Sequence record: MK250019.1
Length of the DNA: 64,000 nt
Strand: one strand, 5' to 3'
Below, piece by piece: positions 34,346 through 61,794 of this stretch. The position numbers and the translations under genes are program-made. The first letter of the stretch is position 1. Every line of letters begins with the position of its first letter. The notes below the pieces were generated by a model. That model ran no database searches and had not been told where the DNA came from. It saw only the letters and a list, made by a program, of their open reading frames with translations.

Positions 34346-34355
34346 CAAATTAATG

Positions 34356-36934: not shown

Positions 36935-37266
36935 ATATAAATCAATTCGAATAAATATAGAAGTGATTTTATTTAATATGTGAATTGATAATTTGTGAAA
37001 CATGTGTCTGACGGAAAGCACATGTATTTTTCGTGCAATGTTCAATTTTAATTAATTTTAATTTTGATAGGTTAAAGGAGTAAACCTATAAGCGCGGAAT
37101 AATAAAGTCGTATTGAAAATCAAATTTTGATTCCATAAAAGTTGGAATATGGTTTTTGAAGGCTAAGATGAAGTTATAAAGAATCTAACACACCACATAT
37201 GTGATATATGTATATGTTATTTCTTTTTCATCGAATAATAAAAAATAACATAGAAACAATTAATTT

Positions 37267-38000: not shown

Positions 38001-39377
38001 ATGGCTTTATATTTAAACAATGCACAATATGGCTCAGGTAATCAATCTTCTCAAGATACACTAATACATAGTTATAATAAATCTTTTTTTTCAGATTATA
38101 ATCATGCAAAGACGGTGTTATTATAGAAAGTTATGAAACCAGGTGAAGTAACATTTGCTTATTATTATGATTCAAAAGTACCTTATGGATAGAATGTTAT
38201 TTTTGCAGTTGGACCATTATCTGATGCAGGCTGTAATACTATATTTAAAAATGCTGATGATATTGACAGTGTAAAAGACGTATTAGATGAAACTATTGCA
38301 GATATAAATGCAAGTGTATCTAATATGGAAACTAAAGTTGATGGAATCATTGAAGAATGCAAAACACCTTTATTAACAAAAATAGAAAAAAACATCAATG
38401 ATATAGATGATATAAAAAGAGATATATCTACAATTAAATCTGATATAGTTAATACTAATGATACATTAACAAGTAAGATTAATCAAGTAAATAATCAATT
38501 AACTGCATAGATGTCTCAAGATAAAACAAACCTTATTAATAAGATTAATGATACGTCAAATGATATAGTTAAATATATTGATAATACATCTAATGCTATT
38601 ATTAATTATATTAATAGATCAGTTTCTCTTGCAGTAGGAAATGTAACTACTGATTATACATAGAAAAATGATGATACATCAATGACATTGGGTAATGCAA
38701 TTTCTACATTAAAATTAAATTTAGAATAGTCTATTTCTGATTTATCTGGTAAACATGATGGAGATATTACCGGTTTATAGAGAATAATTGATGAAGCAAA
38801 AGGTAAAGTAACAGAAAATACAACGACATTATCACAGTATATACAATAGAATAATAGTTTTGTAAGAAAGTTAAATACAAGTATTAATAATGTAAATAAT
38901 GCATTAGATGAACGTATTACTAATCTCAGATAGGATTTTGAAACATTGGAAATACCTAAAAAAATTCATGACTTATCAACAAGGATTGCTACTGTAACAA
39001 CTCAATCAAATGTAGATCATGAAAAACTTAAGGCTATTGATAATTTAGAAAGTAGATTATCCAAATGTGAAGGTCGATATGAAAAACATTTCGAGATGGA
39101 TATGGTTCAGTTAAATGGAAATATAAAAGATATAAATACATCTATTTCAAATATTATTAAAAGTATTGACAATATTAAGATAAAAACTGGTACCAGTGAA
39201 GGAACTGTATAGGATAAGTTTGATAATATAAGTAGTCAACTTTTTAATATAAGTGAACGTTTATCAAAGATAGATTCATCTATTAATGCACTTGAAACAA
39301 AATTTGCTGGAAATGAAACATATCATAATGAATTGTTAAATGAATTATCTTCATATAAAAATTCATTAGATTATTAA
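38001..39377 (+). CDS. coiled-coil structural protein, paralogue family member 1 (458 aa)
   Basis: Continuous with TAG readthrough. N-domain PGEVTFAYYYD...FAVG followed by heptad/hendecad repeats. Confidence 0.8.
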
Positions 39378-39401
39378 TAAAAATTAAAAATATATTATAT
39401 T

Positions 39402-41957
39402 ATGGAATATAAAAGTCCGTTATTAAATTAGATAATTTCTATATTAGACAAACGTTCTGAAGCTGGTGAAAAAAGAATTAAGAAGACAGAAGATTATGTT
39501 AAGAGTTATGATACATCTATTACTCGTCATATAAACAAATAGGTTGAAGAACTTAATACATCTATAAAAACAGCAACAGATAAAGTAATAGGAGATTTAA
39601 ATACAAGTATTAATAATACTGTTGATACCATATCACATGATATTTTGAGTGTTTCAACAAACCTTAAAACCGCCATTGAATAGATTTACTATAATATTAA
39701 TACATCTATTAATGGCGGTAAAACTGATACATCTATATATCTTATTGGTTTAAAAAATGAATTAGAAAGAAAGATAAATGATGTTGACTAGAAGTATAAA
39801 ATTGCTGATAGTTAGTTATCAAGTACGTTAAGTTAGAATATAAAAGATGTATCAACTAAATTAACACAGAAAGTTAATATAATTGATACAAAATATGATA
39901 CAAGTATTTCTAACTTATCATAGAAGCATGATAGTTCATTTATATAGGTTACTAATTTAATTTCTAGTTAGGGAACTTCAATTGGTAATAAAATTACAAG
40001 AGATATTAGTACAGCTAAATAGGAATTAAATTCTAATATATCTACCATATAGAGTAATTTAAATGGTAAAATTGATAATACAAATACTTCTATTAATTTA
40101 TAGTTTGATAGAGTTGCTAGAAAATTAGAACATTAGAATACTTCAATAGATGATATATCAATACGCTTAAATACGACGTCAAGAGCAATAGTAAAAGCAT
40201 TAAATACATCAGCTAATGATTTATATAATATTACAGATGATATATCTACAAAATTAAAAAGTTCATTAAACTAGGTAAAAATAGATATAACAGGAAAATA
40301 TGATGCAGAGATTAGAAAGTTAAATACATCTATTAGAAATTTAGATCTTGATACTACTAACTCATTAAGTACATTAAATACATCTGTAACAACATTAGAA
40401 ACAAATTAGAAAAAATTAAATACATCATTAGCTAGTTTACGAGAATCATTTGATAAATTAGTTGATACTGAAGATGTTAATGGTGTTATAGATACATTCA
40501 GAGAAGTTGAAGATTTTTTATCTAATATATCAGATGAAAAAACATTAACTGGTATGTTATCTGAGTTAAAAACTGGAATAGATTCACACATTGATGCAAG
40601 TATTAAAGATATATCAAATGCAATTGATAATGTTAAAGAAGAAATAGGAACAAATATTAATAATAGAGTTAATGCGTTAGAAACAACACTTAATACAACT
40701 GTAAATACAAAACTTACAGAAATTAATTCATCTATTAATGATATTAGTACACGTTTAAAATAGTCAATAACCGATCAATAGACATATGTATCTACAGAAA
40801 TTGGTAAAATAAATTCATCAATAAAAGATTTAAATACAACAATTAAATAGAATGTTGATACATCTTTAAAAGCAATTCAATCTAAATTAGATTCATCATT
40901 AAAAACAGTTTCAGATTCATTAACTTCAACAACAAGTAGAGTTGCAAAATTAGAATTAAATAACGTAACTGCTGCAAAGGTAACAACCGGTACAAATACA
41001 AAATTATGGAATGATACAACTGACAGTATAAATGAAGATTCATATGTTATTAACAAATAGGTATTAACAACTAAAGAAAATAATGTTGAAAAAACATATG
41101 AATAGAAATTAGTAAACAGTAATATTATAAAAGAAATTAATAAATCTGAAAAAGCAGTTGCATCTAATTTATTAACTGTTAATAATAATATTGCTTCTAT
41201 TAATACAAAATTAAGTAATATTAATTCAAGTATTGGTAATATATTAAATTCTTCATATATAAACAAGAAGAATAAGTATACAACAAACGGATTTAATACA
41301 ATAGGTGGTTGTTTAGATTTTATTATTAATGATATGTATTATACTGCACCTGCAGCTGTAAATGTAACATATACAGTAACACCTACATCATTTATTAGAG
41401 GTAAGAATACAAGTGTTACATTTAAATATACTGTTAATAATTATCCTAATAATATATAGAGTATTACATATAATGGTGCTACAAAAACAGAAAGAACATT
41501 TACAGAAACAATTACAGTAAGTAATTCTGTATCAAGAGCATTATCTGTAGTTTCTAACTATGTTGACAGTAAGGATGCTAGACCAACATCATTTAATAAA
41601 ACATTAACAGTATATGCTAATTTAGAATTATATGTTTGGACATCAACATCAACATCATTTAATAAAGCATATACATCTGCTAATATGCCAGCTGGATATA
41701 CTACATATACATATAATTCAGGTAATTATAGTATAAATGTAAATAATGGTACTGCAGCAAAATATATATTCTTTGTTTCAGATAAGAATTTAGTTGAATC
41801 AAAATTCTTTGTATATGAACATGGTGGTGCACCAACATTAGGTGGTGGTATTACAAATTTAGGAACAATAACAATATAGAAGTATGATGTTGCATAGACA
41901 TATTACTTATATAGATCTAATAATGTCCTTAATGGTAATTGGGACATTAAATTTTAA
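39402..41957 (+). CDS. coiled-coil fibre-like protein with beta-rich C-terminal domain (851 aa)
   Basis: Continuous with TAG readthrough. Repeated LNTSI/DTSI motifs and a Thr/Val-rich Ig-like C-terminus. Confidence 0.78.
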
Positions 41958-41991: not shown

Positions 41992-44900
41992 ATGGCTATA
42001 AAACTTCCAGATACGCTGAGAACTGCAAATGATACCTATCCTATTGCAGTCTCAGAAGAAATAAAAGGTGGTATTCGTGGAGTTTAGACAGTAGAAGATT
42101 TGAGTAGAATAAATAATGCTTTGATTTCTAATGGTATGTTAGTATGGGTAGAAAAATCAAAGAGTTATTACAAATATACAAATGGAACATGGTCTATATT
42201 ATCTGCTTCTGCTTCTGGAACTCCATTACTTACAACTGCATAGATAACAGCATTAAAAAATCAAGGAGTTTTACCTGATAATTACATTTGGATACGTTCT
42301 AAAGATGATATTGATTTAGAATAGGAAGGTGTTGTAAATAAAACATATACAACATCAAAGAATGGTAGTTATGTTGATATATTATTTCAAGCAATAAGAT
42401 AGTTACAGACAGAAGTTGCTAAAATGAGAAATACATTTAAATATGGAATGTATTCTTGTACAAATAAAGAAATGGCAGTTTCTAATGTTGTTAATGAAAT
42501 GGTTGCAACACCTGCAGATGAGCCACTATGGGCAATAGAAGAAGATGGATTATCTTATGTATATGCAATAGATTTTAATTCTGCTGATATTGATTTAAAA
42601 GATCCATTAAAGCAAATAAGAAATGTAAATAACTCATATTATGAAATAAATGGTGATTTATCTGACAAGAAAATTTATTTTGATCATACATTTTCTGGTG
42701 ATATTAAAGATATTGATGAGGATTTAACTGGTTCTACATTGGAAGCATTAGAGGACCCAAAAGAATTTGCATATTTAACAGTAACTAATAAGCGTGAAGG
42801 AAACAAATCATACTTATTAGATTTTTCTGTTCTTATCGAACCATAGAAACATGAGTCGATAAAAGATAATTCACAACGTAAGTCAATTGATAATATTAAT
42901 TTTGGAAATTTATTACCAAATTACGTAGAAACTGTAAATATAATGTTATTATTAAATAGAAAGCAATTTAAAAAAGATAATTGGTATGGAAATAATTATT
43001 TATATGTTTCAATATCAGATTATTATACAAATAACGTTATTGTTTAGGGATACTATAATAAAGATGATGGTAAACTTTATAAAAATATACAAGATTTAGG
43101 AGATCAATATTTCTTTAGTAGATTTTATTTCGGTAAATTAAATTTAAATAAATTAGCATTTTATTCACGTTATCAAGATTTTACAAAATTTATTAATGAA
43201 ACAGATAAAGTTGTTAAACCAAATATTCCTAATGATAGTGATTATAGATATAAAGTTGCACATATTACAATTCGTTCTGTTTCTGATGAAGCAGAATTAA
43301 CAGAAATAAAGCAATACCTTCCTAATAATGAATTAATATGGGAAGAAAAAAATAGTGTTTTATGGATAAAATCAAACGATAAGGTAGTACAAATTGGTAG
43401 TACAAGTAATTCAAATAATAATGGAAATCAAAATAATAATAAAGATAGTATGACACAAGAAGAATTAATAAAAGCTCTTAAAGAAATGGGCATTGTTTAT
43501 GATTCAAATAATGGATTAGAATTAGAATAGGCTAAAGTAGAAGATATTACTTTTATTAATTCTAATTTAACTGATAAGTATATATATTCAATAGATTCGG
43601 AAGGTAATTTACATTCTACTATTGAACCAAAGACAACTTTAAAAGAACGAGTTGCAAATAAAGAATTATATAAATCATCAAAGCCTGGTGCAACATTTAA
43701 ACCAAGAGGATTTGTAGCAAATCTTGTTTCTGATAATCCTACATCAGCAGGTTCACTTTTAAATGATTCTGATAGAATTCATATTTCACAATTTTATGCA
43801 CCATTATCTACAGATATTGAAGAAGGAAAAATTGGTTGTTCTCATGCATTTATCGAATTAAGTAATACATCAACAATCGATTTTTAGTTAGATGGTTGCT
43901 ATTTACATTATTTTAGTCTTAGTGACACTGGAGTATCAACATATTATAATCTTCCGTTAAAAGGTGTAATACCTGCCGGTAATACATTTGTTATTCGTGG
44001 TAAAAAATATGCAGATTATAAAAATTCAAATGTATTTATTAAAGTAAATTCATTTGATTTAGAATGGTTTTTTGAAAAAGATGTATTAGCAGATTTAACA
44101 GTTAATACTGCATATAAAGGATATGGATTAGCATTAACATACGGTAATAAAGTAGGAGATGAAGAAATAGCACCACAAATAACATTAGCTCGTGCAAATG
44201 CATCTGGTTCATATGAGTATAGAGATAATTATATTGATGGTATTTTATACTCATATAAAGTTGCAAATATTCCAGAAAATTATAAAACATGGGCAATTTA
44301 TAATTCAGGATATGATGTATTATCAAATAGTCTATTTAGAGAAACATTCTTACTTGATCCTGCTAAACAAGGATTTTAGGCTCTTTGTTCTAATAAAAAA
44401 GACTCATCAAGAGCACGCCATGAAAAATCAACAGACTTTACATTATTATCACTTGCAAATGAATTTATTGAATTCCCTAAATCCGATTCGGTAAAAGCTG
44501 TGTCTGATTATACACCACGTGCATCATTTGAACATAAAACAGTTATTACAGAAAAAAGTAATATCGATTTAAATAAGCCAAATATGATTACATGTGCCTT
44601 TGGTATTAATATGTTAACTACACGTTGTTTCAACTGGATTTCTGGAGGTATATTTGATGAATTTATTTGGATTAGAAAGAAAGGAAGTACAACTGCATGG
44701 AAAGATTGTGCAAGATATGAATCATATACAAGTTCAAAATGTAGTGTTGTAACTGAGCGTTCTACAAGTGAAATTACAAAGAAAACATTTAATGAAAGTG
44801 ATACAGCATAGAAAGAAGCAAAAACATATATTTATGACAGAATAACCGGAATATTCCCTGGTACAACAACAGAATATACTGCACATAAAGTTATTATTAA

Positions 44901-46551
44901 CTTACCAACACCATCACAGGGTACATCAGAATATGAATATTGTGTTGGTCGTGCATTGCTTGATGGAAGCCCAGACCCTGCACACAGTAATGTAAATGAA
45001 CTTTATACATTTACAATGTATGCATCTAAATATATACCACGAATTTATCAAACTTCTGACCAATAGGGATTCCATTGGATTGAATATCAGGTATGGGCTG
45101 GTGCAGCTAAAAAAATAAATGAATATATTAATTCCACTAAAGGTTCTGAATATATGCCAGTATTAGTAAATACAGGTGATATGACACAATCTGGTTCTCG
45201 TATTTCAGAATGGTTTGATTATTATGAAGCTGGTAAATGTTTATTTAATCACCTTGAATAGATGAATGTTGTTGGTAATAATGACTTAGCTAATATAGAT
45301 CCTACATTATTAGGAAATGGTGATGATTCTGGTAAATCTAATTCATTTTATTTCCATGTATTTTACTGTTATGAAGTAGATAATTTTGGTAATACTGCAT
45401 ATCCTATAATTAATAAGAAATACATACCATCTTTATATTATTTCGGAACAAATGATTATCGATTTATAATGGTTAATTCAGAAATTACTGTAAAATGTTG
45501 TTCTGATTGGTATAATTTATCAAATTATAATATATATACTGGTTATACAGTTGGTACAAATAATAATTATAAAACAGAATCATGGACACCAATATATAAT
45601 ATGTTATTTGCAATAATGAATAATTTTACAGGAAAACAATTTATTACTGCATGTCATGAAATGCCATTTACAGTTATTACTAAGGCAAATATTATGTACA
45701 ATAATTCAATAACAGCAAAGCAAAGAAGTGCATCAGGTACATCATTAGTTGGATCACATTTAAATTCAATAACAGCAGAAGATATTGGTTATGGATTTAA
45801 CTGGTTCTCTCGTTTACTTGAATATTTTGCAGGTAAAGGTAAAACAAAATTATGCATCGGAGGACATAAGCATACATATGCTATGACATTCCCTATTAGA
45901 GAAAATTATACTTATATAGAAAACGGTGTAAAAAAAGATTCTAAAACAGCACCAATGCCTATGTCAGCGAACCTTAATAATGCAATTGAAAAATCAGTTA
46001 GTTGGACAAAAAAATATACATATAATGCAACTGATTGTACATTTACTGAAAGTACTTCTGGTACTGATACTGTACATACAAGTAAGTTGCCATATATTAA
46101 TACAAATGTGAAATCAATGATATATAATGGAGCTACTACTATTTCTGGTGCAGCAAAAGCAGCGCATTTATTTTTACCATATTAGTATTTAAATACATTA
46201 ACTACAAGTAATGCAATTACATACTTAATGTGTTAGGCAACAGGTTATAAGTACTCATCAAATAAGGAATTACCTGCATATACATAGGCATTCTCTGAAC
46301 TTATACCATAGACAACAGAAAAAGAAAAACCAGCAGATTCTCAAAAATACCCAATGTTTATAGATATTTTACTTAATAATACAACTATATCATATAAATT
46401 AATAAGTGTTAATAATGTATTTGACAGTAAATATTTATTTACACAACGAACATATGGAACTTCTGCAAGTACATTAAAGTATATAAAAATAAAAGATAAT
46501 ACTTTATATGGAACTTGGTTAGATAATATTACAACATTAAAAACACTTTAA
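41992..46551 (+). CDS. large virion-type protein with lamin-tail-like domain and purple-acid-phosphatase-like metallophosphoesterase (1519 aa)
   Basis: LTD-like FIELSNTSTIDF*LDGCYLHY...LPLKGVIPAGNTFVIRG and phosphoesterase motifs TSDQ, NTGDMTQ, GNND, CHEMPF and GGHKH. Confidence 0.8.
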
Positions 46552-46574
46552 TAAAAATTATATTATGATATAAT

Positions 46575-49500
46575 ATGAAATATAATGGCAAAGATAATTT
46601 TATAACAGATAATGATATTCTTGTTACTTCTGGTGTTGGAAGTAACAAGAATCTTCATACTGTTATTACTGAATAGTAGGATGATATTGATGAATTAAAA
46701 TCAAATGTAAAATGGATCTATAAATATGGCGGTGTAGGTTCTGGTTCTGGTTCTGGTTCTGGATCCGGTTCTGGCGGAAAATGGAAACCAACAATATAGA
46801 TAGGAGGTATATTAGCAGAAACTGGTGTTCCTGTAGATCTTTCTAATAAAATAATAGATAATGTTGCATTAGTTGATATAAATATTGCTATTAGTAATCC
46901 AGGAGCTGGTGGCTACTAGTTTAAAATTTCATATTCATATGATGATGGTACATATCAATCATATCCTGAGTTATTAACAACAACTAATAACTGTAGTTGT
47001 ACATTTACTCTTAAATTAACAAAAAATAGTAAATTTGGTTTAAAAATTTAGGATATTGATAATAATAGTAAAGATTATATTTTTACATATTTTTTATTCG
47101 GTCTTAGTTATAGTATAAAAGCAATGGCATATAATGCTCAAGGTAAATTATATGAATTACCAGATACTAATTATAAACCGAAATCATATCCTAATGGTGT
47201 TGTATATAGATTAGAAATTAATAATTTTGGTGGATTTAATCTTAATTATAATGTTGGTAATACTATAGATTATAAAATTATTTCTATAAATGAGCAAGAT
47301 TATAAATTATATAATAATAATCCAAATAAAGGACCATATTATGATGAAACTAATCATAAGGGAATGATTGATAAATCACAAGTATCTATTAAATTAGACT
47401 ATTTAATAGATAATAAGGTATTATCAAATGAACTTAATTTTGGTACATAGACATTTTTTGCTAATATAATTAATATTTTAAATGGTGTAGCAGATAATCA
47501 TACAATTAGTTCAGAGTATTCTATAGTTCCAGATACAAATGAATATATAATTTGTTTATCAACATCAATAAATGGTAAAATATATAATGATAATACTGAT
47601 ATTACTGACGAAGAAGCAAATAAAGAAGCATTTTATGCAGGTGATAAAGTAACATTTAATTTGAGACCATTTAACTTTCCTACTGAAACAATTCAAGTAA
47701 ATTATGTATTAATTAATTAGAAAAATGGTATTAATATAAGTAGTACACTAAATTTAAACGCTGGTCGTTATACATCTGCTTCTTTTAATATATACACAGG
47801 ATGGACAAAAATTATTATCAATAAAACAATTACTAAATGGTATTATGGTAAATCTGTATAGTCAACTATTAATTGGTATAATGAAGAAGGTGATAAACAA
47901 TCTAAGGCAAGTAATTTAATTTCATCATATGTAAGATTTAATAATTCTATTTCAGATAATATGGTGTCTAATAGTATATTTAAATCTATAAAAATTAATA
48001 ATTATTATGAATTAACAAAAAATATAAATGCATAGGATAAAATTATTGATTTATATGGTACAAGTACATCTTTTGATATTAATACATGTATGCATATTGC
48101 ACTTGGTGTACAATTTTCTTCATCAAATGTAAATGAAAAAATATTAGAGTTAAAAAACTCTAATCATTAGACTATGTTTACATTATACCAATCAAAATGT
48201 GTATTTACAAATGGTGGAGATGCAAAAATATATATTCCAAAAGAAAAATAGTATGCACCTCAAGATTTTGCAAAATATCATTTAATTGATATTTATATAA
48301 AACCAGCAGATCCATATATTTTAACTAATACTGTAGAAGGTAATAAATCGTAGGATTCTTTATATTATATCCAAGATTTAAAAGATAAGATAACTACTGA
48401 AAATAATACGAACCATAATAATGAACTATATTATGCTGAGATTTATATAGATGGTATTACAGATTGTATTACTACAACATTTACAAGTTCATATTCAGAA
48501 CTTAGATATTTATATTTGAAAAATATAAATATCTCATATAATTTAATTGAGTTAAGTAAGTTTAATTCATTAAGATATACATTTAATGATATTGATGCAG
48601 TTTTATATTATTATACATATAAATAGTTATTATCAAAAAATACTTCGATTACATAGAACAATATAAATATGATTTCTAATATATTATCATATGATTATAA
48701 TTCTATTTCTTGTGATTTGAGTAATAAATGTATTGTTAGAAAACATAATTAGTTACGTATAACTAAAGAATTTATAGATACTATTTCTAAATACATAGAA
48801 ATCCCTATTTATATAATAAATGTTAGTCATACACGTGAAAATGATAGTACAACATCTATTTTTTAGTGGTTAAATGGTTCATACGATGAAAATGTAAATA
48901 TATAGTCATGGCCTATAAAGTCATCAAATATTGATGGTGTACATAGTACAGGTATTACATATATTTCACCTACTGACCATTCATCAACAGTAATAAAATT
49001 TCCAAATAAAGATGAATATACATAGGCAATATTTACATTAGATATACAAGGTTCATCTACACGAAGAAACCATGGAAAGAACTTAGATTTAAATTTAGTA
49101 AATAATAATACAACAACAGGAACAAAATTATTATATTCACCTAATTTTGATTCTGCTGATGATAATACATTCTTACCAGAATCTAAATTTACATTAAAAG
49201 CAGATATTGTAGACTCTGGTCATACAAATAATACTGTAATGGGTAAATTTATAAATGATAACACCAAAAAATTCGAAACAAATTCTAAAGGTATGTATAA
49301 GAATTATATTAAGAATTGTTTGGAAGGATTCCCATGTATTGTAATATTAAATATTGATTATGAAGTAGATAACTCTGTACCTGAATATTATTTCTTAGGT
49401 ATATATAACTTTAACTTAGGTCGTGGTTCATATTCAAACTTAGGTTATGTTGATAATTCAATTTTTGATTCAAAATTGGAATCAGTTTCACCAGAAAAAC

Positions 49501-52500
49501 CATTTGAATTTTTTGCGATATAGGAAACAAGTTATGAGTTAAGAACAGATTTCGGATGTGCTGAAATTACTGGTAATAGTCCATAGTTTGACTTCTCCCT
49601 TTGGGATGATACAATATTATATAATTTTGAGGAAGAATCAGGTAATAATTATATGTGGGATGATATTGTTACTAGTTAGCAAGGTGCATTTAAAGAAGCA
49701 TTAAAATATTTTGTTAGAGATGTCGCAATCTCGGGTGGTTATATTTTTAAATATTTAGGTAAAGAAGCAATAGATCATAGTGAATGGACTGGTTGGAATA
49801 AAGTTGGTTGTGTTCCTAATGTAAAAAAACAATATAAACGTAGATCTAGTGATCTTAAAAATATATATTATGATCCAAACATAAAAATTCCGAATGACGA
49901 AAAATGGCAATCTATATTTGAGCGTACAATGAGAGATTCTGAATATCAGGGTTCTCAATCATATGCACGTTTGGATTATGTATCATTAGTTGAATATTAT
50001 ACTATTTGTATGGCTTTTGGACTTGTTGACTCTGTATAGAAAAACTTGAATGTTAAAACATGGACATTAAATAAAAAAGAACGATTAGAAACAGATGTAG
50101 AAGAAAAGAATTTAATTAGATCAAGATTCTATATTTCATTCTATGATATGGATACATGTTTAGGTATAAATAATGATTCACAAGATACAACAACATTCTG
50201 TTTTTCTGATTATTGGAAATCAAATGAAACAGTAAAAAATGACATTCATATATTACAATCTATAACTCAATATAGAGATTATTTTAATGATACTGATAAA
50301 GAATTAGGTGAATATGGTTATGATACACCATCTTCATTCTTATTTGCAATCGCTAAATATGGTACAACAGTATTTAATCAATCAGAGTTAGATCATATAA
50401 GTTATTTAGAGTACTAGACTCCTACATTAGTATGGTTAAAATATAGAGCAGCAAATGCAACTGCATATACAGGAAATAATAAAGAAGGTACAGGTTCGTT
50501 AAGAAGTGCTGATTATTTTATGAATACATATTATAAAAAACATTTGGAAGGCGTTCCGGAATTAATATTTAATTTAAATTATAAAGCAAAGTATATAGTA
50601 TATAATATAGAAGAGTCTTGGGAATTTGATGAATCAAAAAAATCAACTTTTATTGGAACATATACAATAAATCCAAAAACTATTTATACTCAAGGCTTTC
50701 ATATAAATGCAACTAAATTTAGAGGACGTTCTATATATCGTGTTACTGATTGGTTTGATGCTAGATTACATATATTAGACGCATATTTTAATTTACAAGA
50801 TGCAAGAGAATATATTTCAGTAACAGAAGAAGAAAAAGCACTTTAGCCATCATATCCAAATAATAATAATAATGTTGAAGTTACATAGCTTTCTATAAAA
50901 AATAATTCAGAAGTTAGTAGAGCATTTTAGGATGTATTAACATATGCTACAGATATTAACATAAAAACATAGATATTTGGTAATGGTACAGAATCTCCAA
51001 AAATTACATTCCCACCAGAACCTATAACTATATTGGTTCAGGCATAGGATTATACACCATTGTTATTTGATGTCAGTGGTACAATAAAAGCAAAATATTT
51101 ATTACGTAGTGCTGGTAATAAATACCAAATAACATTCCAGAGTTCTGGTAATACAGACTTTGCTTTTTATGGTTCAAATCAATTAACATATATTAGTGAT
51201 GTAACATGGTTTACTCCATCTAGTTTATATATTATATCTGATAACCTTAGAAATATATATGGTAATAGGCCTAATTATAAAGTTAAGATAGTAAGTATTA
51301 AATCACCAGTATTATAGAGTATCGAGTTAATTGGTACAAATTATTCTGGAACATTGGAATTAACAAATCCTACAGAATATATTAACTTATCAACTATTGA
51401 TATTTCAAATAGTTAGATAAATCTTAAATTAACAGATTTAACAGTTCAAGACGTAAATCTTACAAGTGTTTATTGTAGTAAATGTATGATAACAAATTGT
51501 AATAATATTAAAACGTTAAAACTTAATGATTTAACAGTAACAAATGAACTTAGTTTAACTATTAATTATAGTAATGAGATATTATTAAATGAAATTGAAC
51601 CTAAAAATTTTTCAATAACAAATAATTTAAGTAAAGTTAAAGGTAAAGATAATATATTAATTATAGATGGTAGAAAAAACCACAAATTTTAGACGTTAGA
51701 AACATTAACAATACATGGTTTTTCAAAAGTATATATATTTGGTTGCCCAATGTTAAATAAAGTTTCAATTTCTGAAATTAATTCATTATCTATAAATAGT
51801 GACGGATTTGATCCAAATATATATTTAGAAGAATTTGTTGTATGTAATTGCTCAACATCAAATCTTGTTAGCACATTTACTATTAATTCAAATGATTTAA
51901 ATGTTATTGACTTACATGAATTTAGTCATTTAAAACGAGTATGTTTTGATAGAACTTAGAATTTTACATCTGTAATATTACCAAGTACATTAACTTTATA
52001 GGGAAGTGAATTTAGCGGATGTAAATCACTACAATATTTAGATATTCGTGATAAAAATAATGTTAAATCACCTGCTATTACAATTTCGAATTATAATACA
52101 TATAGTTTTTCTTATAGAGGTACAAGTTCTGGAAATACAGGATTTAATACATATACAGCAGAATCTGAGGGTATATTTTACAGATGTATTAAATTTAAAT
52201 TAGAGCGAACAAAAACTGATAATTCTATTACACCTTTACGTGTAAGTACTTCAGTTACATCATTATCAAATTTATTTAATGCAGTTGAATATAAAACTGC
52301 TTATGATATAACATTAGGAAAAATAGCGAATTTTATAGATAATATACCTGTAAATAATAATATTACAAATATAAGTTATATGTGTAATAATTAGTTAGGT
52401 ATAAAACTATTAAAAGATACATTTAAAAGTGATGGTCCAAATAAATCAACATTACACTTAGGTACATTTGGAAAATGTACGAATGTTTCTCATGCATTTA

Positions 52501-55250
52501 CTATAGATGATCCATATATTAACAAATGGATTTGGTATGATAAAAATAAAACACAAGTAATCGGGTGTAATGATTATTATACATTATTTGGACAAGGAAG
52601 TAAAAATATATATATAACTATAGATTGTTTTTATCCAATACTAACAAAAATTACAAAGTTTATAGGAAGTGATTGTATATAGTTAATGGTAATACATCCT
52701 ATATATTCTGGTGCTAATTAGACATTTAATATTAATACTATTCTTACAGATGATAAAAAGAAATAGGAAAAAGAATATGAAAATGCATCAAAATATTCAA
52801 AGAGTATAACATATGTTAGTGATTCAACTAATGCTGGTAATATTATATCTGGAACTGTTTATGCACGTAGTATATTTGTAAATGAAACTAATTCAAATGG
52901 TAACGTTGATACAGAAGATAATGTTTCTGCAATATATCCTACATCATTAACCGATTTTTCTAGTGTTAATTTATGTAGTACAACTGGTTTAACATGGAAT
53001 TTATATGGTTTATTTAGTAAAAAATGGAAAATATAGTATATATCTGCATTCCAATATAATTGTAATATACGAGAACACGCTATAGAATACGAAGATATAT
53101 TAAATAATAAGTTCTTACCATCAACATTAATAAATATAAATAATAGTTTTAATACAGGATTCTCTACTAGAGTTGATTATTCTCGTTTTTTGGATTTTAA
53201 ACAATTATTAACACAATATGAGAAATGGTATAATGATAAAGATAATAAAAATAAAAGAGACTATCAATTCTTTGGAAGTTGTCAAAGTAACAATATGACT
53301 GACACTACATATTTAGCAGGTATGACTTTTGATAAAACAATATCAAAAGGAAACTTCTATGAATGGTTATGTAGAGTTATAGAATCATCATGTCTTAAAT
53401 GTATTAATTTCTTATTTAAAAATACTAATATTATAATATCAAAAGATGCAACAGATGTAAATTTTACCATTGATAAAGCATTTGAAAGCATTGGTTATAA
53501 TAGTAGTTAGCGAAAAAAAATATTAGATAATGCAAATAATAATTAGTTAGTAAATATATATGGTTTATTTTAGAATTTAAGATGTTATAAAGAAGATGAT
53601 TTAAACACACCATTATATATGGATTTTGGAACAGATTTATTTAAGTATCTACCTAATGTTAAAGTAGTTGCTGCCTTATTCTATGGAACTTATTGGAATA
53701 ACCCTATACCTTTTAATTTATTTAATAAAAGATATAAAGTTTCTGATAGATATGGATATATGCCTGTACAAGAAGATAGTGAACTTATAAGAAAGAAGAT
53801 AAAATATGTTTCATACACATATAAATAGGATATTACTTATATATCATCATGCTTTAATAAAACACATTTTAATGCACAAAAAGACGGTGATAAATAGGCA
53901 AATACATTTGATATAAACAATATACCAACGAAGGATGCTGATGGTGAAGTATTAATAAATTATTACCAATTTGTAGATAATGAAAATAATCCACTTGAAA
54001 CTGATAGAGAAAAACATATTATTGATAAAATAATACAATGTTATACAAATGAAACAGGTAGTGAGGAATTATATCTTTATCCATCTTATGAATATACTGA
54101 CACATTAAAGTTACATGGGGCATTCTATATAGGCATATTTGATAAATGTGGTAATACAACTGAATCAACTTATTCACCATAGCAAGTGTTACCATTATCA
54201 GGAACTATAAATAACTATTTAAATAATTTAATTGTTTCTCCAGACTTACTATATGCATGTACATCTAATTGTACAATGGATAATGTTCTTAGTTAGGATG
54301 GTATAACAAAAGATATGTTAACTGGTATTTTACCGAAACATTTTTATAAAAACATAAAAACAATTAATACTGCATCTAATTATTCTGCATTTAAAGATTG
54401 TTTTGTAATTCCAAATTATATAGGTACATATATAGAAACATCAGGAGATATTGTAAAATTAAGATATAATATATACTCATTTATACCTGATGATTTTACA
54501 AATAGTAATATGACAGATTTAAAATATGCATTTAACTTTAAAATGCATTGGCCAAAATAGGGTATTCAAATAGGAAATACATATGAATATGATTTTTATG
54601 TAGTATCTACAACTAATTCATTTGATAGAAATATAACATCATTAAATAATGCATTTCCTACCTCATTTGTAGATGGTGATAAAAACGTAGTAAATACTAG
54701 AAATGTTAATTATAATACATTAAATAGATCTATTCACTTCAATTTATCATGTAGTTATACTACTTCTACATATAATAAAGAAAATAAAGAAAAAATATTT
54801 GGATCATTATCACACGATAATTTAACATATATTGATACATTCAATACAGGAATTAATATGAGTATATTTACACAATTAGATGTAACTAATTTAATTACAA
54901 ATATAAATGTTCTATACGGATATTTTGGTTATATTTTTAATTAGTCATATGACATTTCTAATATGAAGTTATTAAATATTGATGTGAAGAATATGTATTG
55001 TATTACATTAACTAATATAAGTGAATTTCAAGATTATCAATTATCTTGTAATATTGTATTTCCTAAATGTAATTCTGTTAATGAAACAACAAAACGTTTA
55101 TTTAATATTAGTATAGGTAACGGTAAAAAATTCCATACAAATACAAGTATGTTTGGAAATAAAACTAATACAGAAATATATAAAAATATGTATAATACTA
55201 AATTTGAATTTAATAACGTAACAAGACCTATTTATGCTGGTGCTGAATAA
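46575..55250 (+). CDS. giant structural protein with CotH-like kinase domain and leucine-rich repeats (2891 aa)
   Basis: Ten track ORFs lie in one frame, joined by TAG readthrough. CotH-like FTLKADIVDSGHTNN...EGFP...FLGIYNFNLGR...LVDSV*KN...FYDMDTCLG. BspA-like LRR (VILPSTLTFIGSEFSGCKSL). Confidence 0.82.
46737..46776 (+). repeat. GGTTCT hexamer tandem encoding a Gly-Ser linker
   Basis: ggttctggttctggttctggttctggatccggttct in frame. Confidence 0.8.
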
Positions 55251-55329: not shown

Positions 55330-58300
55330 ATGGATAAGAAATGTTCTCAACTCATTATAGGTCAATCAATAATTCATAGTTTTAACCCTAAACCGTTTAA
55401 AAATATGGATACTGCTATTTATGCTCTCAATAACAAAGAATTAAGAGCTGGAGAAATTGCTATAGCATATTATAATGACCCTACTGAAACAAGAGGAATT
55501 GGAGCTATTGTAGCAACTGGTAATATTCTACCTGGAGGAAATCAAATATTCAAGAATACAGCATATACAGATAAACTTATAAAAAACGTTAAAGAATTAA
55601 TCGAATCTAATTCAGTTGATATAAGTGTAATAGAAGAAAACGTAAATAATAATATTGCAGATATTGCTGTTTTAAAAACATAGTTAAAAAAATTAACAGC
55701 AGATACAAATAATAATAATTCTTCAATAGATGATAAATTAAAAGAAATCAATATCATTATTGATAATATGAAAAAGGATGTTTCAAATATTATCGATAAT
55801 ATTAATAAAATTGTTGCTGATGCTTCAAAATCTATTGTTGATACAGCAGCTTCTGTTTCCAAAGATTATTTAGCAGCAGATACTTCATTAAAAAACTATG
55901 TTGATAATGAAAACATAAAAATTAATCAAAAAATTGATAATATTTCATCAAATTTTGATACAAAAGTCGAGGAAATTAGTACCAAAATAAATTCCAATAC
56001 AAGTATACTTGAAAATACAATAAATAATAATTCATCATTAATTTATAATGATATTTCAAAGTTAGATGATAAAGTAAATTCTTATAATACAAGTTTAAAT
56101 ACATCTTTAGCATTTAATGTTTCTACACTTAATTCTCGTATCGATGATAATAAAAATTATGTTGATATACGTGAATCTCTTATTAGAAAATATGTTGATT
56201 CTAAAGATGATCAAATAAACTGGAATATTAATGATACATCAAAACATATTCATTATCGTATTGATGAAGAAGTTCATAAACTTAATGATAGAATAACGCA
56301 GGAACATATTGATATGAATAGAGTTATTGCTGATAATAAAACAGAAGCAAAGCGCTATGCAGATCAAATGTTAACAGAAGCAAAATCATATACAGATGAA
56401 GTAGAAGAATATACTAAAGCTTCTATTAAACAAGCAGAACTTGATTCAAAGAAATATACAGATGATGAAATATCAAATTTAGATAATGAATTATCAGAAT
56501 CTATTCATAATACAAGTTTATATGCAAAAGAATGTTATGATGATGTAAAAAAACATCTTAAATTACAAAATGCATCATTAATTACATATGTAAATGATGA
56601 AATCAGAATGTGTGATGAACGAGTTACTGATAGAGTAAATAGTGTTAAAACATTAGTAGATTCTACAAAAACTCAGTTAAATACGTCTATTAATAAAGTA
56701 TATGAAAATGCATTAAAATATACTAATGACACTAAGAGTGAGATATTAAAACATATATTAATTAATGATATTAAAGTAAGGGAAGATTTTGCAAAAGCTG
56801 ATGCTGCATTAGATAAAAAAATTGATGATACTTCTAAATTATTAGGTGATTATGTTGATAATACGTCAAATGCTATTGTTGACCATATTAAAGATACATC
56901 AAAGTTAATATGGAATTATGTTGATAATACATCTAATGATATTGTTTCATATATTAATAATACATCTAATGATATTGTTTCATATATTAATAATACATCT
57001 AATGCTATTGTCGCATATATAGATAAGCAAGATAATGCATAGAAAGATTATACAGATGCAAAGAAAAAAGAAATAATTAATTTTGTTGAAGACCTTTCTA
57101 ATAATTTTAAAACTTATATTGATACCAGAGATAATGCAACATTAAGTGATGCAAAGATTTATACAAATGGAGAAATTCAAAAAGTTAATAATACAATAAC
57201 AACACTTGATGAAAAAGTAGAAGATTATAATAGAAATACACATGAATTAATTACAAATGTTTCAAATGGAATTATCAATGATTATAAAACAGAAATTAAA
57301 AATGTAATTGATGATGTTTCAAGAAATGATACATGGTTATATAATCATATCGAGAAATATAATACAGATCTTTCTGGTAAAATTGATACCAATAATCAAA
57401 CAGTAACAAAATTACTCAATGACGTTTCTGATGGTCTTTATCAAAAAATTGAGAATACATCAGATTATTTAGAAGAGGTTATTACTGCATTAGAAACAAA
57501 GCATAATGATGAAGTAAAGATAACAAATACTTCTATTATGAATTTTGTTAATTCTTATAATTCAAGTACTGCTACTGCTATTAATGCTCTTAATACAAGT
57601 ATTAATGATTATTGGAAAAATATAACAGATACAATTAATACAAATTTAGGAAATGTAAGTACAGGTGTTTTAGGAAAGATTAATACTATATAGAAAGATT
57701 TATCTACATATATTTAGACAGCTGAAAGTACATTAAATTCATTATATAAAAATGCAGATTCCAGTCTTCTTGGATATATAAATGATCAAGATACAAAACT
57801 TCAAAATAACATTGATGATATTTCTACAAAGATTGTTAATAAGTTTAATACTAAATGTGAAAAATTAAGTAATTTAATTAACACTACCACAACTAATTTA
57901 AATTCATCAATCAATAGTGTTCATGATACATTATTCCAGAAAATAGAAAATACATCTACAGAAATTGTTGATGCATTAAATACATCAATATCTAATATTA
58001 ATATTAAATTAGGTTAGGATAAATCTGAATTAATAACAAAGATTGATGATATTTCCACAAAGATTGTTGATGCGTTAAATGTTTCAATTAATGATATTAA
58101 TAAGTTGCTTAAACAGAAAGATGTAGAGTTAGATAACAAGATTGATACTACATACACCAAAATTATTGGAGAGATGAATGCATCTGATGGTATTTTAAAT
58201 AAACGTATAACCGATCTTGAAACAAAACATGTTAATGAATTAAAGCAAAAAGAAAAAGATCTTACAACATTAATTACTAACACAAAAACAGAATTATCTG

Positions 58301-59943: not shown

Positions 59944-60030
59944 ATAAATATAATGGTGATATAGAAATGAAAAGCTATATCACCATTTATTGTTTTCAGA
60001 TAAATATAAAAAATATAGATTTTAATATAT

Positions 60031-61695: not shown

Positions 61696-61718
61696 TATTT
61701 TATTAAATAAACAATTAT

Positions 61719-61755
61719 AAAGAGACTATTTTTCGCGAATAGTCTCTTTCTTTTT
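61719..61755 (+). terminator. intrinsic terminator
   Basis: AAGAGACTATT / AATAGTCTCTT plus a T-tract. Confidence 0.8.
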
Positions 61756-61794
61756 AATAATAAATATAAAAAGAAATTTTAAACAAATATAAAC

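What the first reader, a model, noticed from the sequence alone, without database searches (positions are those of the whole stretch)
41992..55250. Adjacent giant metallophosphoesterase and CotH-like kinase proteins embedded among Ser-motif fibres: a putative virion phosphorylation module
Seen: a 1519-aa LTD + purple-acid-phosphatase-like protein immediately precedes a 2891-aa CotH-like kinase + LRR protein, and both are TAG-gated. Both enzymes keep their apparent catalytic motifs (TSDQ/GD/GNND/HE/GHKH and DSV*KN...YDMD). They are flanked on both sides by Ser-motif-rich fibre genes. Established: CotH is an atypical kinase that phosphorylates serines of spore-coat proteins. Inference: a writer/eraser pair that modifies virion fibres or host-surface molecules during assembly or adsorption. 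This is my best candidate for an undescribed protein system in the window.
Basis: partly seen in the sequence, partly recalled or inferred. Interest (0 to 1): 0.78.

Follow-up and report, generated by a model that had tools for sequence, protein, structure and literature searches.

The report
Conserved phage phosphoesterase plus CotH-kinase gene pair
Two giant neighbouring genes of a Prevotella megaphage (Lak-A2) encode a purple-acid-phosphatase-like enzyme and a CotH-type kinase with intact active sites; the same pair travels as one unit through crAss-like phages, other huge phages and Bacillus phage G, but its target is unknown and it is probably not the neighbouring fibres.

Summary
With TAG read as Gln, window 41992-46551 encodes a 1519-aa protein (A) and 46575-55250 a 2891-aa protein (B). 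The window is essentially Prevotella phage Lak-A2. A's C-terminus folds as a two-domain purple acid phosphatase (Z 22.4 to kidney bean PAP) and carries an invariant variant ligand set (D-Q-Q, GD..Q, GNND, HE, GHKH). B residues 810-1415 fold as a CotH kinase (Z 19.8 to B. cereus CotH), and the catalytic D..N loop and D-x-D are invariant. A then B is adjacent and collinear in 19/19 viral loci, 10/11 further loci, crAss-like phages (already annotated "phosphatase" and "spore coat protein-like"), DAC16-type Bacteroides phages and Bacillus phage G (gp352/gp353). A and B co-diverge (Spearman 0.89), and no other gene is conserved with them. The Ser-motif fibres are real but Lak-specific, so they are unlikely to be the conserved substrate. 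Best reading: a mobile two-gene cassette in the tail-fibre region, made of functionally coupled phospho-enzymes. A is probably trimeric. B has a conserved kinase core inside fast-evolving, LRR-bearing flanks. The cassette probably acts at the virion/host surface or on itself. Virion location and substrate are inferred, not shown. I rate it a new variant of known kinds, of moderate to high interest.

The parts
41992..46551 (+). Gene A: 1519-aa protein (16 TAG=Gln codons) with an N-terminal fibre-like region, an LTD-like Ig domain and a C-terminal PAP-like metallophosphoesterase
   Evidence: more than 1040 relatives; 99% identical to Lak-A2 MK250019.1 at the same coordinates
41992..42591 (+). 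A residues 1-200: predicted trimerisation region. The interface lies at residues 1-70 and the conserved coiled-coil around 127-146 (DILF.AIR.LQ.EVAK.RN).
   Evidence: Homotrimer test on the near-identical twin P0153 (3 substitutions in residues 1-330): ipSAE 0.81 against best control 0.00, but pLDDT about 38. Nine of 66 family N-termini hit the collagen trimerisation domain PF20010, best E 2.4e-6. Conserved columns.
43777..44013 (+). A residues 596-674: lamin-tail-domain-like Ig fold (sub-threshold)
   Evidence: Pfam LTD E 7.6e-5, 23.5 bits, below the 34.3 cut-off. PF00932 is on record for many relatives and found in phage G gp352.
44545..45027 (+). A residues about 852-1012: beta-sandwich domain equivalent to the N-terminal domain of plant purple acid phosphatases
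   Evidence: Model m63bb8de6f5bd (pLDDT 89.5). VIA-align Z 22.4, rmsd 3.3 A, 390 of 423 residues of kidney bean PAP aligned across both domains. Pur_ac_phosph_N E 8.6e-13 in the homologue gp352.
45028..46548 (+). A residues about 1013-1519: binuclear metallophosphoesterase catalytic domain plus a C-terminal beta-rich extension. Invariant residues: D1023-Q-Q1025 (Q1025 is a TAG codon at 45064-45066), G-D1063-x-x-Q1066, G-N1096-N-D, H1222-E, G-H1292-K-H1294.
   Evidence: Foldseek against PAPs E 3e-12, PhoD 2e-6, GpdQ. Invariant columns in 60 sequences. Metallophos hit in 54 of 60 members, best 9e-8. Motif mapping through gp352 to wheat PAP 6gja.
46575..55250 (+). Gene B: 2891-aa protein (47 TAG=Gln codons). 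It starts 23 nt after A's stop and holds a conserved CotH-kinase core within fast-evolving flanks.
   Evidence: family of 304 clusters at 50% identity, nearly all 2400-3100 aa; divergence profile
49002..50819 (+). B residues 810-1415: CotH-type atypical kinase domain with large insertions. Catalytic-loop D1152 and N1157 (DSVQKN, nt 50028-50045), metal-binding D1191 and D1193 (YDMD, nt 50145-50153), and the invariant N-lobe K875/D877/D880 (TLKADIVDS).
   Evidence: Model m86d1814a31cc (pLDDT 85.7, pTM 0.90). B. cereus CotH 5jd9: Foldseek prob 0.98; VIA-align Z 19.8, rmsd 3.5 A, 314 of 358 residues aligned, next-best Z 2.2. HHalign to cellular CotH 94.8%, E 4.9e-8, across the catalytic core and to phage G gp353 99.2%. 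Pfam CotH hit in 7 of 58 members. Invariant columns.
50820..55247 (+). B residues 1416-2891: fast-evolving C-terminal region with LRR-like repeats (L..L.I.NC..L pattern), lowest identity around residues 2201-2300
   Evidence: 31-60% identity to other Lak phages, against 70-75% for the kinase core. LRR_5, LRR_RPS2 and LRR_EndoS hits in only 2-3 of 32 family C-termini, best 1.7e-6. LRR_EndoS and LRR_5 in gp353. No direct Pfam hit for the window's own sequence.
46575..49001 (+). B residues 1-809: N-terminal region of unknown fold, with a (GS)n linker at residues 54-68
   Evidence: Only low-complexity Pfam noise; 46-67% identity within Lak. Not folded here.
38001..41957 (+). Context, not part of the conserved module: two coiled-coil fibre-like genes upstream (458 and 851 aa) carrying the [ND]TS[ILV] motif
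55330..63999 (+). Context, not part of the conserved module: three coiled-coil fibre-like genes downstream (1537 aa, 554 aa, and more than 735 aa running off the window end). They share an N-terminal LLPGE..FAYYYD..AVG motif that A and B lack.

Best explanation
A and B form a self-contained two-gene cassette that is exchanged horizontally among tailed phages. It sits in the tail-fibre/spike gene region.

A is a fibre-like, probably trimeric protein. Its C-terminus is a purple-acid-phosphatase-fold binuclear metallophosphoesterase with a family-specific ligand set: Gln replaces the PAP Tyr, and Asn replaces the His of GNH[DE].

B is a giant adhesin-like protein. It has a conserved, catalytically intact CotH-type kinase core embedded in rapidly diversifying LRR-bearing regions.

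Shown here: both folds, invariant catalytic residues, strict A-then-B adjacency, and co-divergence across Lak megaphages, other huge phages using three genetic codes, Crassvirales, DAC16-type Bacteroides phages and Bacillus phage G.

Inferred: the two proteins are made late and are mounted on the virion tail. There B's variable modules bind a host-surface structure, and the two phospho-enzymes act as a coupled pair on one shared phospho-substrate. Only A and B are conserved together, so that substrate is most likely either a host envelope molecule or A/B themselves. CotH autophosphorylates, as cited in PMC7821199. The Lak-specific Ser-motif fibres are a less likely substrate.
For: Folds: A against kidney bean PAP, Z 22.4, 390 of 423 residues aligned (Foldseek E 3e-12). 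B against B. cereus CotH, Z 19.8, 314 of 358 aligned, next-best Z 2.2.

Catalytic residues: invariant in 60 A and 58 B sequences at 33-50% identity. D1152/N1157 and D1191/D1193 align to the cellular CotH D..N and D-x-D; these correspond to B. subtilis D228 and D251, whose mutation abolishes activity.

Coupling: A then B is adjacent on the same strand in 19/19 IMG/VR loci, in 10/11 loci found independently through B, and in cr124_1, crAss002, DAC16 and phage G gp352/gp353. Gaps between the genes are often -4 to +9 nt. Pairwise similarities of A and B correlate at Spearman 0.89. No other gene is conserved with them.

Tail/fibre character: the trimer test gave 0.81 against control 0.00. Collagen trimerisation domain hits occur in 9 of 66 N-termini. 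gp352 has an Mtd_N tail-fibre domain, and gp353 has LamG lectin and LRR domains. A Crassvirales review lists phosphatase domains among tail-spike subunits. B's flanks evolve fast around a conserved core. In Lak the pair lies between fibre-like genes. CotH domains fused to receptor-binding C-type lectins are noted in other phages.
Against: No proteomic, structural or expression data place A or B in any virion. The crAss002 paper has no such data. The phage G paper's text does not mention gp352/gp353 and its supplements are not held. No RNA run was listed.

A's N-terminus is not homologous to the Mtd_N-bearing N-terminus of gp352 (prob 0.08) and lacks the N-terminal motif shared by the neighbouring Lak fibres.

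The trimer prediction rests on a fold with pLDDT about 38, and the tool's calibration used two copies rather than three.

A kinase on the outside of a virion would have little ATP available, from general knowledge. So a surface-acting kinase is mechanistically awkward, and the kinase may act only inside the producer cell.

The window's own sequences miss the Pfam thresholds. The Gln and Asn substitutions in A's site could alter or lower activity.
Confidence: 0.55

Rival explanations
1. One reading: B phosphorylates serines of the neighbouring Ser-motif coiled-coil fibres during assembly, and A erases those marks. This would be a writer/eraser pair acting on virion fibres.
For: Kinase and phosphoesterase are both apparently competent and strictly coupled. 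In Lak the pair is flanked by five genes with 35 copies of [ND]TS[ILV], a motif almost absent elsewhere in the window. CotH is itself a component of the structure it phosphorylates.
Against: The motif-bearing fibres accompany the pair only in Lak. Flanking ORFs in 14 other lineages have zero or one copy of the motif, and only A and B are conserved together. The motif is not basic like the Ser-Lys-Arg repeats of CotB and CotG. An unregulated kinase and phosphatase acting on the same sites would cycle futilely.
Confidence: 0.1
2. A and B are internal virion (cargo) proteins. They are ejected into the host with the DNA and act in the cytoplasm or periplasm at the start of infection: a kinase and a phosphoesterase that take over or disarm host processes, in the way T7 gp0.7 and other phage kinases do.
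For: Both are very large, like known ejected proteins of crAss-like phages (cargo and vRNAP proteins). A kinase needs ATP, which is available inside cells. Heavy TAG use fits late expression followed by packaging.
Against: All accessory domains are of surface or binding type: LTD, LRR, LamG lectin, Mtd_N and collagen trimerisation. B's flanks diversify rapidly, as receptor-binding proteins do. A is predicted to trimerise like a fibre. The pair lies among tail-spike or fibre genes, not next to the crAss cargo/RNAP block. PAP-type enzymes are typically extracytoplasmic, from general knowledge.
Confidence: 0.15
3. A and B are non-virion late enzymes. They work in the infected cell on host envelope precursors or receptors, for example to exclude superinfecting phage, to aid release, or to prevent progeny from sticking to debris.
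For: Both are enzymes with intact sites, nothing places them directly in virions, and ATP is available in the cell.
Against: Sizes of 1500-2900 aa, trimerisation and fibre-like features, and binding repeats are unusual for soluble cytoplasmic enzymes. The position within structural or fibre gene blocks is conserved in unrelated phage backbones.
Confidence: 0.1
4. The enzyme folds are used only as structural or binding scaffolds, as fungal CotH proteins act as invasins, with no catalysis.
For: A lacks two canonical ligands, the Tyr or His of motifs I/II and the His of GNH[DE]. B has large insertions relative to CotH (606 against 358 residues). The window's own sequences miss the Pfam thresholds.
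Against: The remaining metal ligands and the kinase D..N and D-x-D residues are invariant across lineages that are otherwise only 33-45% identical, including Bacillus phage G. This is hard to explain without selection on chemistry. The substituted positions (Gln, Asn) are themselves invariant, which suggests a defined variant site and not decay.
Confidence: 0.07

Closest known systems
Bacillus CotH spore-coat kinase (Pfam PF08757; PDB 5JD9/5JDA)
   Same: Same atypical kinase fold (Z 19.8, 314 of 358 residues aligned). Same catalytic-loop Asp/Asn and D-x-D metal-binding motif. CotH is also an enzyme built into the proteinaceous shell it modifies.
   Different: B's domain is 606 residues with large insertions and lies inside a 2891-aa phage protein with LRR-like repeats. 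The window's sequence does not reach the Pfam model. No CotB/CotG-like basic Ser-repeat substrate is conserved with it. It is always paired with a phosphoesterase, which spore CotH is not.
Plant-type purple acid phosphatases (kidney bean and sweet potato PAP, wheat phytase, lupin PPD1), and PhoD and GpdQ phosphodiesterases
   Same: Two-domain architecture of an N-terminal beta-sandwich plus a metallophosphoesterase core (Z 22.4). The motif Asp, GD, GN, the motif IV His and GHxH are conserved.
   Different: The chromophoric Tyr of GDxxY is an invariant Gln (Q1066). GNH[DE] is GNND. Motif I reads D-Q-Q. The domain is fused to an LTD and a fibre-like N-terminus in a 1519-aa phage protein. The substrate is unknown; the structural neighbours include both mono- and diesterases.
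crAss-like phage 'phosphatase' and 'spore coat protein-like / internalin-like / transferase' genes (cr124_1 gp20/gp19, crAss002 gp19/gp20, IAS virus)
   Same: True homologues of A and B (31-45% and 24-37% identity over the enzyme domains) in the same order and orientation.
   Different: They sit in about 100-kb podoviruses rather than a 541-kb myovirus, and their flanking genes differ. They exist only as product names in GenBank or UniProt, without experimental or comparative treatment that I could find.
Bacillus phage G gp352 (metallophosphoesterase) and gp353
   Same: Same two-gene module. gp352 is LTD + Pur_ac_phosph_N + Metallophos with the same TDQQG / GD..Q / GNND / HE / GHxH signature. 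gp353 is CotH + LRR.
   Different: The host is a Firmicute. gp352 has an Mtd_N tail-fibre N-terminus that is not homologous to A's N-terminus. gp353 adds a LamG lectin domain. Both proteins are smaller (866 and 2055 aa).
Phage CotH-kinase domains fused to DGR-diversified C-type lectins
   Same: A CotH kinase domain joined to a variable target-binding module in a phage protein. A 2021 paper states these are unstudied.
   Different: The binding module here is LRR-type and diversifies by ordinary divergence. I did not look for a DGR. The obligatory phosphoesterase partner has not been reported for those proteins.

Membership tests
CotH kinase family (PF08757) | Match to the Pfam CotH model above its gathering score | tested here: inconclusive
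   The window's own domain gives no hit at E<=0.1. Seven of 58 family members hit, best E 4.7e-8. The phage G homologue gp353 hits at 3e-16, 60.3 bits against a cut-off of 23.8. HHalign of the family to cellular CotH gives 94.8% and to gp353 99.2%.
CotH kinase family (PF08757) | Atypical protein-kinase fold of CotH | tested here: met
   AF2 model pLDDT 85.7. 5jd9: Z 19.8, rmsd 3.5 A, 314 of 358 residues aligned, next-best Z 2.2. Foldseek prob 0.98.
CotH kinase family (PF08757) | Catalytic-loop Asp (B. subtilis D228; D228Q is inactive) followed by Asn | tested here: met
   D1152 and N1157 (DSVQKN) are invariant in 58 sequences. They align to the invariant D..N of cellular CotH. The D228 role is taken from PMC7821199.
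CotH kinase family (PF08757) | Metal-binding Asp (B. subtilis D251; D251A is inactive) in a D-x-D motif, 23 residues after the catalytic Asp in cellular CotH | tested here: met
   D1191 and D1193 (YDMD) are invariant and align to the cellular D-x-D. The spacing is longer in the window (39 residues) because of an insertion.
CotH kinase family (PF08757) | ATP-dependent Ser/Thr (auto)phosphorylation | not testable with these tools
   Needs a kinase assay.
CotH kinase family (PF08757) | Conserved partner substrate with Ser-rich basic repeats (CotB/CotG type) | tested here: not met
   Only A and B are conserved together. The [ND]TS[ILV] fibres are Lak-specific and the motif is not basic.
Purple acid phosphatase / calcineurin-like metallophosphoesterase (PF00149, PF16656) | Two-domain PAP fold (N-terminal beta-sandwich plus beta-alpha-beta-alpha-beta phosphoesterase core) | tested here: met
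   Model pLDDT 89.5. Kidney bean PAP: Z 22.4, rmsd 3.3 A, 390 of 423 residues aligned. Foldseek E 3e-12.
Purple acid phosphatase / calcineurin-like metallophosphoesterase (PF00149, PF16656) | Pfam Metallophos match above the gathering score | tested here: inconclusive
   Window: 16.8 bits, below the 21.5 cut-off (E 0.0097). Fifty-four of 60 relatives have E<0.01, best 9e-8. gp352 scores 49.3 bits, plus Pur_ac_phosph_N at 49.1 bits. HHalign of the family to gp352 gives 99.8%.
Purple acid phosphatase / calcineurin-like metallophosphoesterase (PF00149, PF16656) | Metal-ligand motifs: Asp (motif I), GD, GN, His (motif IV), GHxH | tested here: met
   D1023, D1063, N1096, H1222, H1292 and H1294 are invariant in 60 sequences. 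GNND, H and GHxH map to GNHE, H and GHVH of wheat PAP through gp352.
Purple acid phosphatase / calcineurin-like metallophosphoesterase (PF00149, PF16656) | Tyr ligand of GDxxY (gives the purple Fe(III)-tyrosinate chromophore) and His of GNH[DE] | tested here: not met
   GDMTQ: Q1066 is invariant where PAPs have Tyr. GNND: N1097 is invariant where PAPs have His. A is therefore PAP-fold but not a bona fide purple acid phosphatase. That PAPs have Tyr at this position is established knowledge of the PAP motifs, not tested here beyond the alignment.
Purple acid phosphatase / calcineurin-like metallophosphoesterase (PF00149, PF16656) | Phosphomono- or diesterase activity with a bound dimetal centre | not testable with these tools
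   Needs an enzyme assay and metal analysis.
Kinase/phosphatase 'writer-eraser' pair | Obligate co-occurrence and co-inheritance of the two enzymes | tested here: met
   19/19 viral loci, 10/11 further loci and 4 annotated phages. Spearman 0.89 between A and B similarities.
Kinase/phosphatase 'writer-eraser' pair | A common phospho-substrate on which both act | not testable with these tools
   No conserved third partner was found. The Lak fibres are not conserved with the pair.
Phage tail fibre / tail spike protein | Trimeric N-terminal shaft or attachment region | tested here: inconclusive
   Trimer test ipSAE 0.81 against control 0.00, but pLDDT about 38. PF20010 hits in 9 of 66 relatives. 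No homology to Mtd_N of gp352.
Phage tail fibre / tail spike protein | Presence in purified virions on the tail | not testable with these tools
   No proteomic or EM data were found for any homologue.
Leucine-rich repeat (BspA/internalin type) protein | Match to an LRR model in B's C-terminal part | tested here: inconclusive
   No hit for the window's own segments. LRR_5, LRR_RPS2 and LRR_EndoS hits in 2-3 of 32 family members, best 1.7e-6, and in gp353.

The most novel reading that the evidence does not exclude
The pair is a self-contained, virion-borne phospho-switch. B, a CotH-type kinase built into the tail, phosphorylates itself, A or adjacent tail parts in the ATP-rich producer cell. A's variant PAP-like phosphoesterase removes these phosphates, or cleaves a phosphodiester on the host envelope, when the tail meets its receptor. 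This would arm or trigger adsorption and ejection. It would be a post-translationally regulated infection device shared by crAss-like phages, megaphages and a Bacillus phage.
Probability: 0.12. Interest if true: 0.85.

Novelty: new variant of a known kind. Interest (0 to 1): 0.6.

Why it matters
Both enzyme superfamilies are known, and the crAss-like homologues already carry product names. Nobody appears to have recognised or tested that a CotH-type kinase and a variant PAP-fold phosphoesterase form one obligate, mobile two-gene unit.

The unit is common: more than 1040 A-family proteins and 304 B-family clusters. It occurs in some of the most abundant human-gut phages and crosses phage morphotypes, three genetic codes and two host phyla.

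Phosphorylation chemistry has no established role in phage tails or adsorption. If the pair acts on the host envelope or on the virion itself, that would be a new type of step in infection.

The question is directly testable, because cultured carriers exist: crAss002 on B. xylanisolvens, DAC16-type phages on B. thetaiotaomicron, and phage G.

Tried and rejected
- Direct Pfam and PHROG scans of A and B gave only a weak LTD hit and noise.
- phmmer and profile hmmsearch against PDB sequences were blank for both domains. Only fold comparison and profile-profile methods made the links.
- The search for related loci with the B domain as a single sequence found nothing in viral contigs. The B orthologues were recovered from the flanks of the A hits instead.
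- The window's own assembly is not held, and the nearest record G001 has no Pfam-level CotH match.
I did not send that segment to any other tool afterwards, so B residues 1416-2891 and 1-809 remain unfolded.
- Conserved neighbours: a third family next to the pair in 6 lineages, and the ORFs upstream in L015/L018, have no Pfam or PHROG match.
- The hypothesis that A's N-terminus is an Mtd_N-type tail-fibre domain was rejected (HHalign prob 0.08).
- Literature searches for the pair, for CotH in Crassvirales or Lak, and for gp352/gp353 found nothing. The crAss002 paper contains no proteomics. The phage G paper's supplements are not held.
- No RNA sequencing run was listed for the locus.
- Hits in 'bacterial' genomes are phage-sized MAG contigs, not cellular genes. 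I therefore rejected the idea that the family is also cellular.
- I considered a complex prediction of A with B. I did not run it, because the touching domains are unknown and the single job was better spent on the trimer test.

Full report
**1. What is in the sequence**

Under the standard bacterial code the region 41992-55250 holds only fragments of 307 aa or less.

The recoding is real, and the residue is Gln:
- In standard-code orthologues of A, 40 of the 101 residues aligned to the window's TAG positions are Gln, against a 2.6% background.
- The TAG-encoded Q1025 falls in a D-Q-Q triplet that is invariant in 60 sequences, including standard-code phages.

The window is about 25% G+C. It is 99% identical, at the same coordinates, to Prevotella phage Lak-A2, MK250019.1. 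The Lak description reports a CTA-anticodon suppressor tRNA and RF2. None of the six tRNAs in this window is a suppressor. TAG supplies 39% of A's Gln codons and 52% of B's. It is absent from many small genes but also common in a Rad50-like gene, so it is not restricted to structural genes.

**2. Protein A**

The window's own sequence misses the Pfam thresholds: LTD at 596-674 scores 23.5 bits against a cut-off of 34.3, and Metallophos scores 16.8 bits against 21.5.

The family is large, with more than 1040 proteins. Fifty-four of 60 aligned relatives hit Metallophos, best E 9e-8.

An AlphaFold2 model of residues 840-1519 (pLDDT 89.5, pTM 0.92) matches plant purple acid phosphatases over both of their domains. 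Foldseek gives E 3e-12. VIA-align gives Z 22.4, rmsd 3.3 A, with 390 of 423 residues of kidney bean PAP aligned. PhoD, GpdQ and Rv0805 follow.

The invariant residues are D1023-Q-Q, G-D1063-x-x-Q1066, G-N1096-N-D, H1222-E and G-H1292-K-H1294. Phage G gp352 hits Pur_ac_phosph_N and Metallophos clearly and aligns to the family at 99.8% HHalign probability. Through it, GNND maps onto GNHE, and GHxH onto GHVH, of wheat purple acid phytase.

Six classical ligand positions are therefore kept. The PAP tyrosine is an invariant Gln, and the His of GNH[DE] is an invariant Asn. A is a PAP-fold metallophosphoesterase of a distinct subfamily seen here only in phage sequences, not a bona fide purple acid phosphatase. 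Its structural neighbours include both monoesterases and diesterases, so the chemistry cannot be narrowed further.

The N-terminal 330 residues contain a conserved coiled-coil element. Nine of 66 relatives hit the collagen trimerisation domain. A homotrimer test on the near-identical database twin P0153 scored ipSAE 0.81 against a best control of 0.00. That mark was reached by 21 of 30 solved pairs and 0 of 23 single chains. The runs agreed in at least 44% of contacts, the partner pLDDT was at least 37, and the calibration used two copies rather than three. This supports a trimeric, fibre-like N-terminus but does not show it.

**3. Protein B**

No Pfam CotH or LRR hit is obtained for the window's own sequence. 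An exhaustive HMMER search with residues 780-1420 found 304 clusters at 50% identity, nearly all 2400-3100 aa, with the domain at about residues 750-1400.

A model of residues 810-1415 (pLDDT 85.7, pTM 0.90) has Bacillus cereus CotH kinase as its only meaningful PDB neighbour. Foldseek gives probability 0.98. VIA-align gives Z 19.8, rmsd 3.5 A, with 314 of 358 residues aligned; the next entry scores Z 2.2.

Seven of 58 family members hit Pfam CotH, best E 4.7e-8. I retrieved seven genuine full-length CotH domains from MAGs. Their invariant core is D-x-x-x-x-N followed, 23 residues after the first Asp, by D-x-D. That matches the D228 to D251 spacing of B. subtilis CotH, where D228Q and D251A abolish activity.

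HHalign of the phage family against these domains gives 94.8% probability, E 4.9e-8. It aligns DSVQKN (D1152, N1157) and YDMD (D1191, D1193) to those motifs. Both motifs, and an N-lobe K875-A-D-x-x-D-S element, are invariant in 58 sequences that are otherwise 33-46% identical to the window.

LRRs have only transitive support: 2-3 of 32 family C-termini, and phage G gp353.

**4. The pair is one unit, and it is widespread**

A then B, on the same strand and usually separated by -4 to +9 nt (23 nt in the window), is found in:
- all 19 IMG/VR loci recovered through A, on contigs up to 554 kb, read in the TAG-recoded, TGA-recoded or standard code;
- 10 of 11 loci recovered independently through B that have enough upstream sequence; all of these lie on phage-sized MAG contigs;
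- Crassvirales: cr124_1 gp20 'phosphatase' plus gp19 'spore coat protein-like protein, similar to CotH kinase/internalin', and crAss002 gp19 'phosphatase' plus gp20 'transferase/internalin-J LRR';
- DAC16-type 178-kb Bacteroides thetaiotaomicron phages;
- Bacillus phage G. gp352 is Mtd_N + LTD + Pur_ac_phosph_N + Metallophos, and gp353 is LamG + CotH (3e-16) + LRR. HHalign probabilities are 99.8% for A and 99.2% for B.

Normalised similarities of A and B over 190 lineage pairs correlate at Spearman 0.89; the pairs are not independent. Across 16 lineages no other flanking gene is conserved. An unannotatable third family is adjacent in six of them.

Lak, crAss-like phages and phage G are classified in different virus taxa and, in crAss-like phages and phage G, the pair sits among different neighbouring genes. 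This distribution means the cassette moves horizontally as a unit.

**5. What the context says about function**

In Lak the pair lies between five coiled-coil, fibre-like genes. These carry 35 copies of [ND]-T-S-[ILV], against 1 copy in about 8400 residues of the nine other large proteins scored in the window, A and B included. Four of the five share an N-terminal motif that A and B lack.

These fibres do not travel with the pair. Flanking ORFs in the other 14 lineages examined have zero or one copy of the motif.

Evidence for a tail or host-interface role is indirect but consistent:
- the trimerisation signals in A;
- Mtd_N, LamG and LRR modules in the phage G homologues;
- a Crassvirales review that counts 'phosphatase domains' among the hypervariable tail-spike genes;
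- an earlier remark that phage CotH kinase domains occur fused to DGR-diversified C-type lectins and are unstudied;
- the evolutionary pattern within Lak, where A is 75-97% identical through most of its length and B's kinase core is 70-75%, but B's flanks are only 31-60%.

Evidence against:
- no proteomic, imaging or expression data exist for any homologue;
- A's N-terminus is unrelated to the gp352 N-terminus;
- an externally mounted kinase would have little ATP.

**6. Verdict**

The two refutation criteria that can be tested in silico, degenerate catalytic residues and lack of co-occurrence, were tested and not met.

The 'virion phosphorylation module acting on Ser-motif fibres' reading is only partly supported. 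Functional coupling of a kinase and a phosphoesterase is strongly indicated. The fibres are an unlikely substrate, and virion location is inferred.

My best explanation (confidence 0.55) is a mobile tail-region cassette of two coupled phospho-enzymes that act on a host-envelope molecule or on themselves. The rivals are:
- fibre writer/eraser (0.10);
- ejected intracellular effectors (0.15);
- non-virion late enzymes (0.10);
- catalytically silent scaffolds (0.07).

The components belong to known superfamilies, and the crAss homologues already carry product names. What appears undescribed is the obligate pairing, the variant PAP ligand set, and the breadth of distribution from crAss-like phages to megaphages of two host phyla. 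I classify it as a new variant of known kinds, with interest 0.6.

Noticed in passing
window 31177-34836: Cluster of six tRNA genes (His-GTG, Pro-TGG, Arg-ACG, Arg-CCT, an 81-nt Cys-GCA, Met-CAT). None is a TAG suppressor, so the CTA suppressor reported for Lak phages must lie outside this 64 kb.
   Followed up: partly
window 15564-17240, 26125-27744, 11071-11841, 31319-32320: In-frame TAG is not confined to structural genes. A Rad50/SbcC-like ATPase has 19 TAG codons (46% of its Gln codons), and three other ORFs use TAG for 56-60% of Gln. Many small ORFs (for example 27925-30872 and 35469-37866) have none.
   Followed up: partly
window 38001-39377, 55330-59943, 60031-61695, 61795-63999: Four coiled-coil fibre-like genes share an N-terminal motif (about LLPGE-x-x-FAYYYD ... 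AVG ... IFKN). It is probably a common attachment domain and is absent from A and B. With 39402-41957, these genes carry 35 copies of [ND]-T-S-[ILV].
   Followed up: partly
window 60031-60160: The fibre-like ORF 60031-61695 begins with a Cys/His/Pro-rich stretch (CHPCPPPPPMPPHCGPHHGPCHDPFHDPCCEPPHHCHPPY) that looks like a metal-binding or disulphide-rich cap.
   Followed up: no
loci L001-L019 (IMG/VR): The same A+B module is read in three genetic codes in different huge phages: TAG-recoded (L001-L006, L009), TGA-recoded (L007, L013) and standard (L008, L010-L012, L014-L019).
   Followed up: partly
L006:3952-4956, L009:6568-7656, L022:5444-7237 (DAC16_84), L026:1117-1881, L008:20918-22012, L012:20406-21587: A third protein family (about 250-600 aa, no Pfam or PHROG match) sits directly upstream or downstream of the pair in six lineages. 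It was not found in the Lak window at E 1e-6. In L015 and L018 a 330-aa ORF just upstream resembles part of A.
   Followed up: partly
window 19618-23469 and 23599-25416: An unusually long (1283 aa) tail-sheath-like protein with a weak Phage_sheath_1C hit at its C-terminus, followed by a 605-aa ORF with a weak Vsr-like endonuclease domain.
   Followed up: no
window 42322-42324 (A residue 111): The database twin of A (P0153) has Tyr where the window has a TAG codon. This may be a TAG to TAY change between near-identical Lak strains; the twin's DNA was not examined.
   Followed up: no
Genome-contig loci L025, L027, L028, L030, L031, L033: Phage-sized contigs (up to 400 kb) carrying the module are binned into MAGs labelled Erysipelotrichaceae, Bacilli, Clostridium, Lachnospiraceae and Anaeroplasmataceae. 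These are probably low-GC huge phages mis-binned as bacteria.
   Followed up: no
G003 (Paludibacteraceae MAG; loci L038, L041, L045, L048): One Bacteroidales MAG gives 14 separate Pfam CotH matches, most lying in open frames of 500-2700 aa (a few share one frame). Cellular CotH paralogues are therefore abundant in the host phylum and are a possible source of the phage domain.
   Followed up: no
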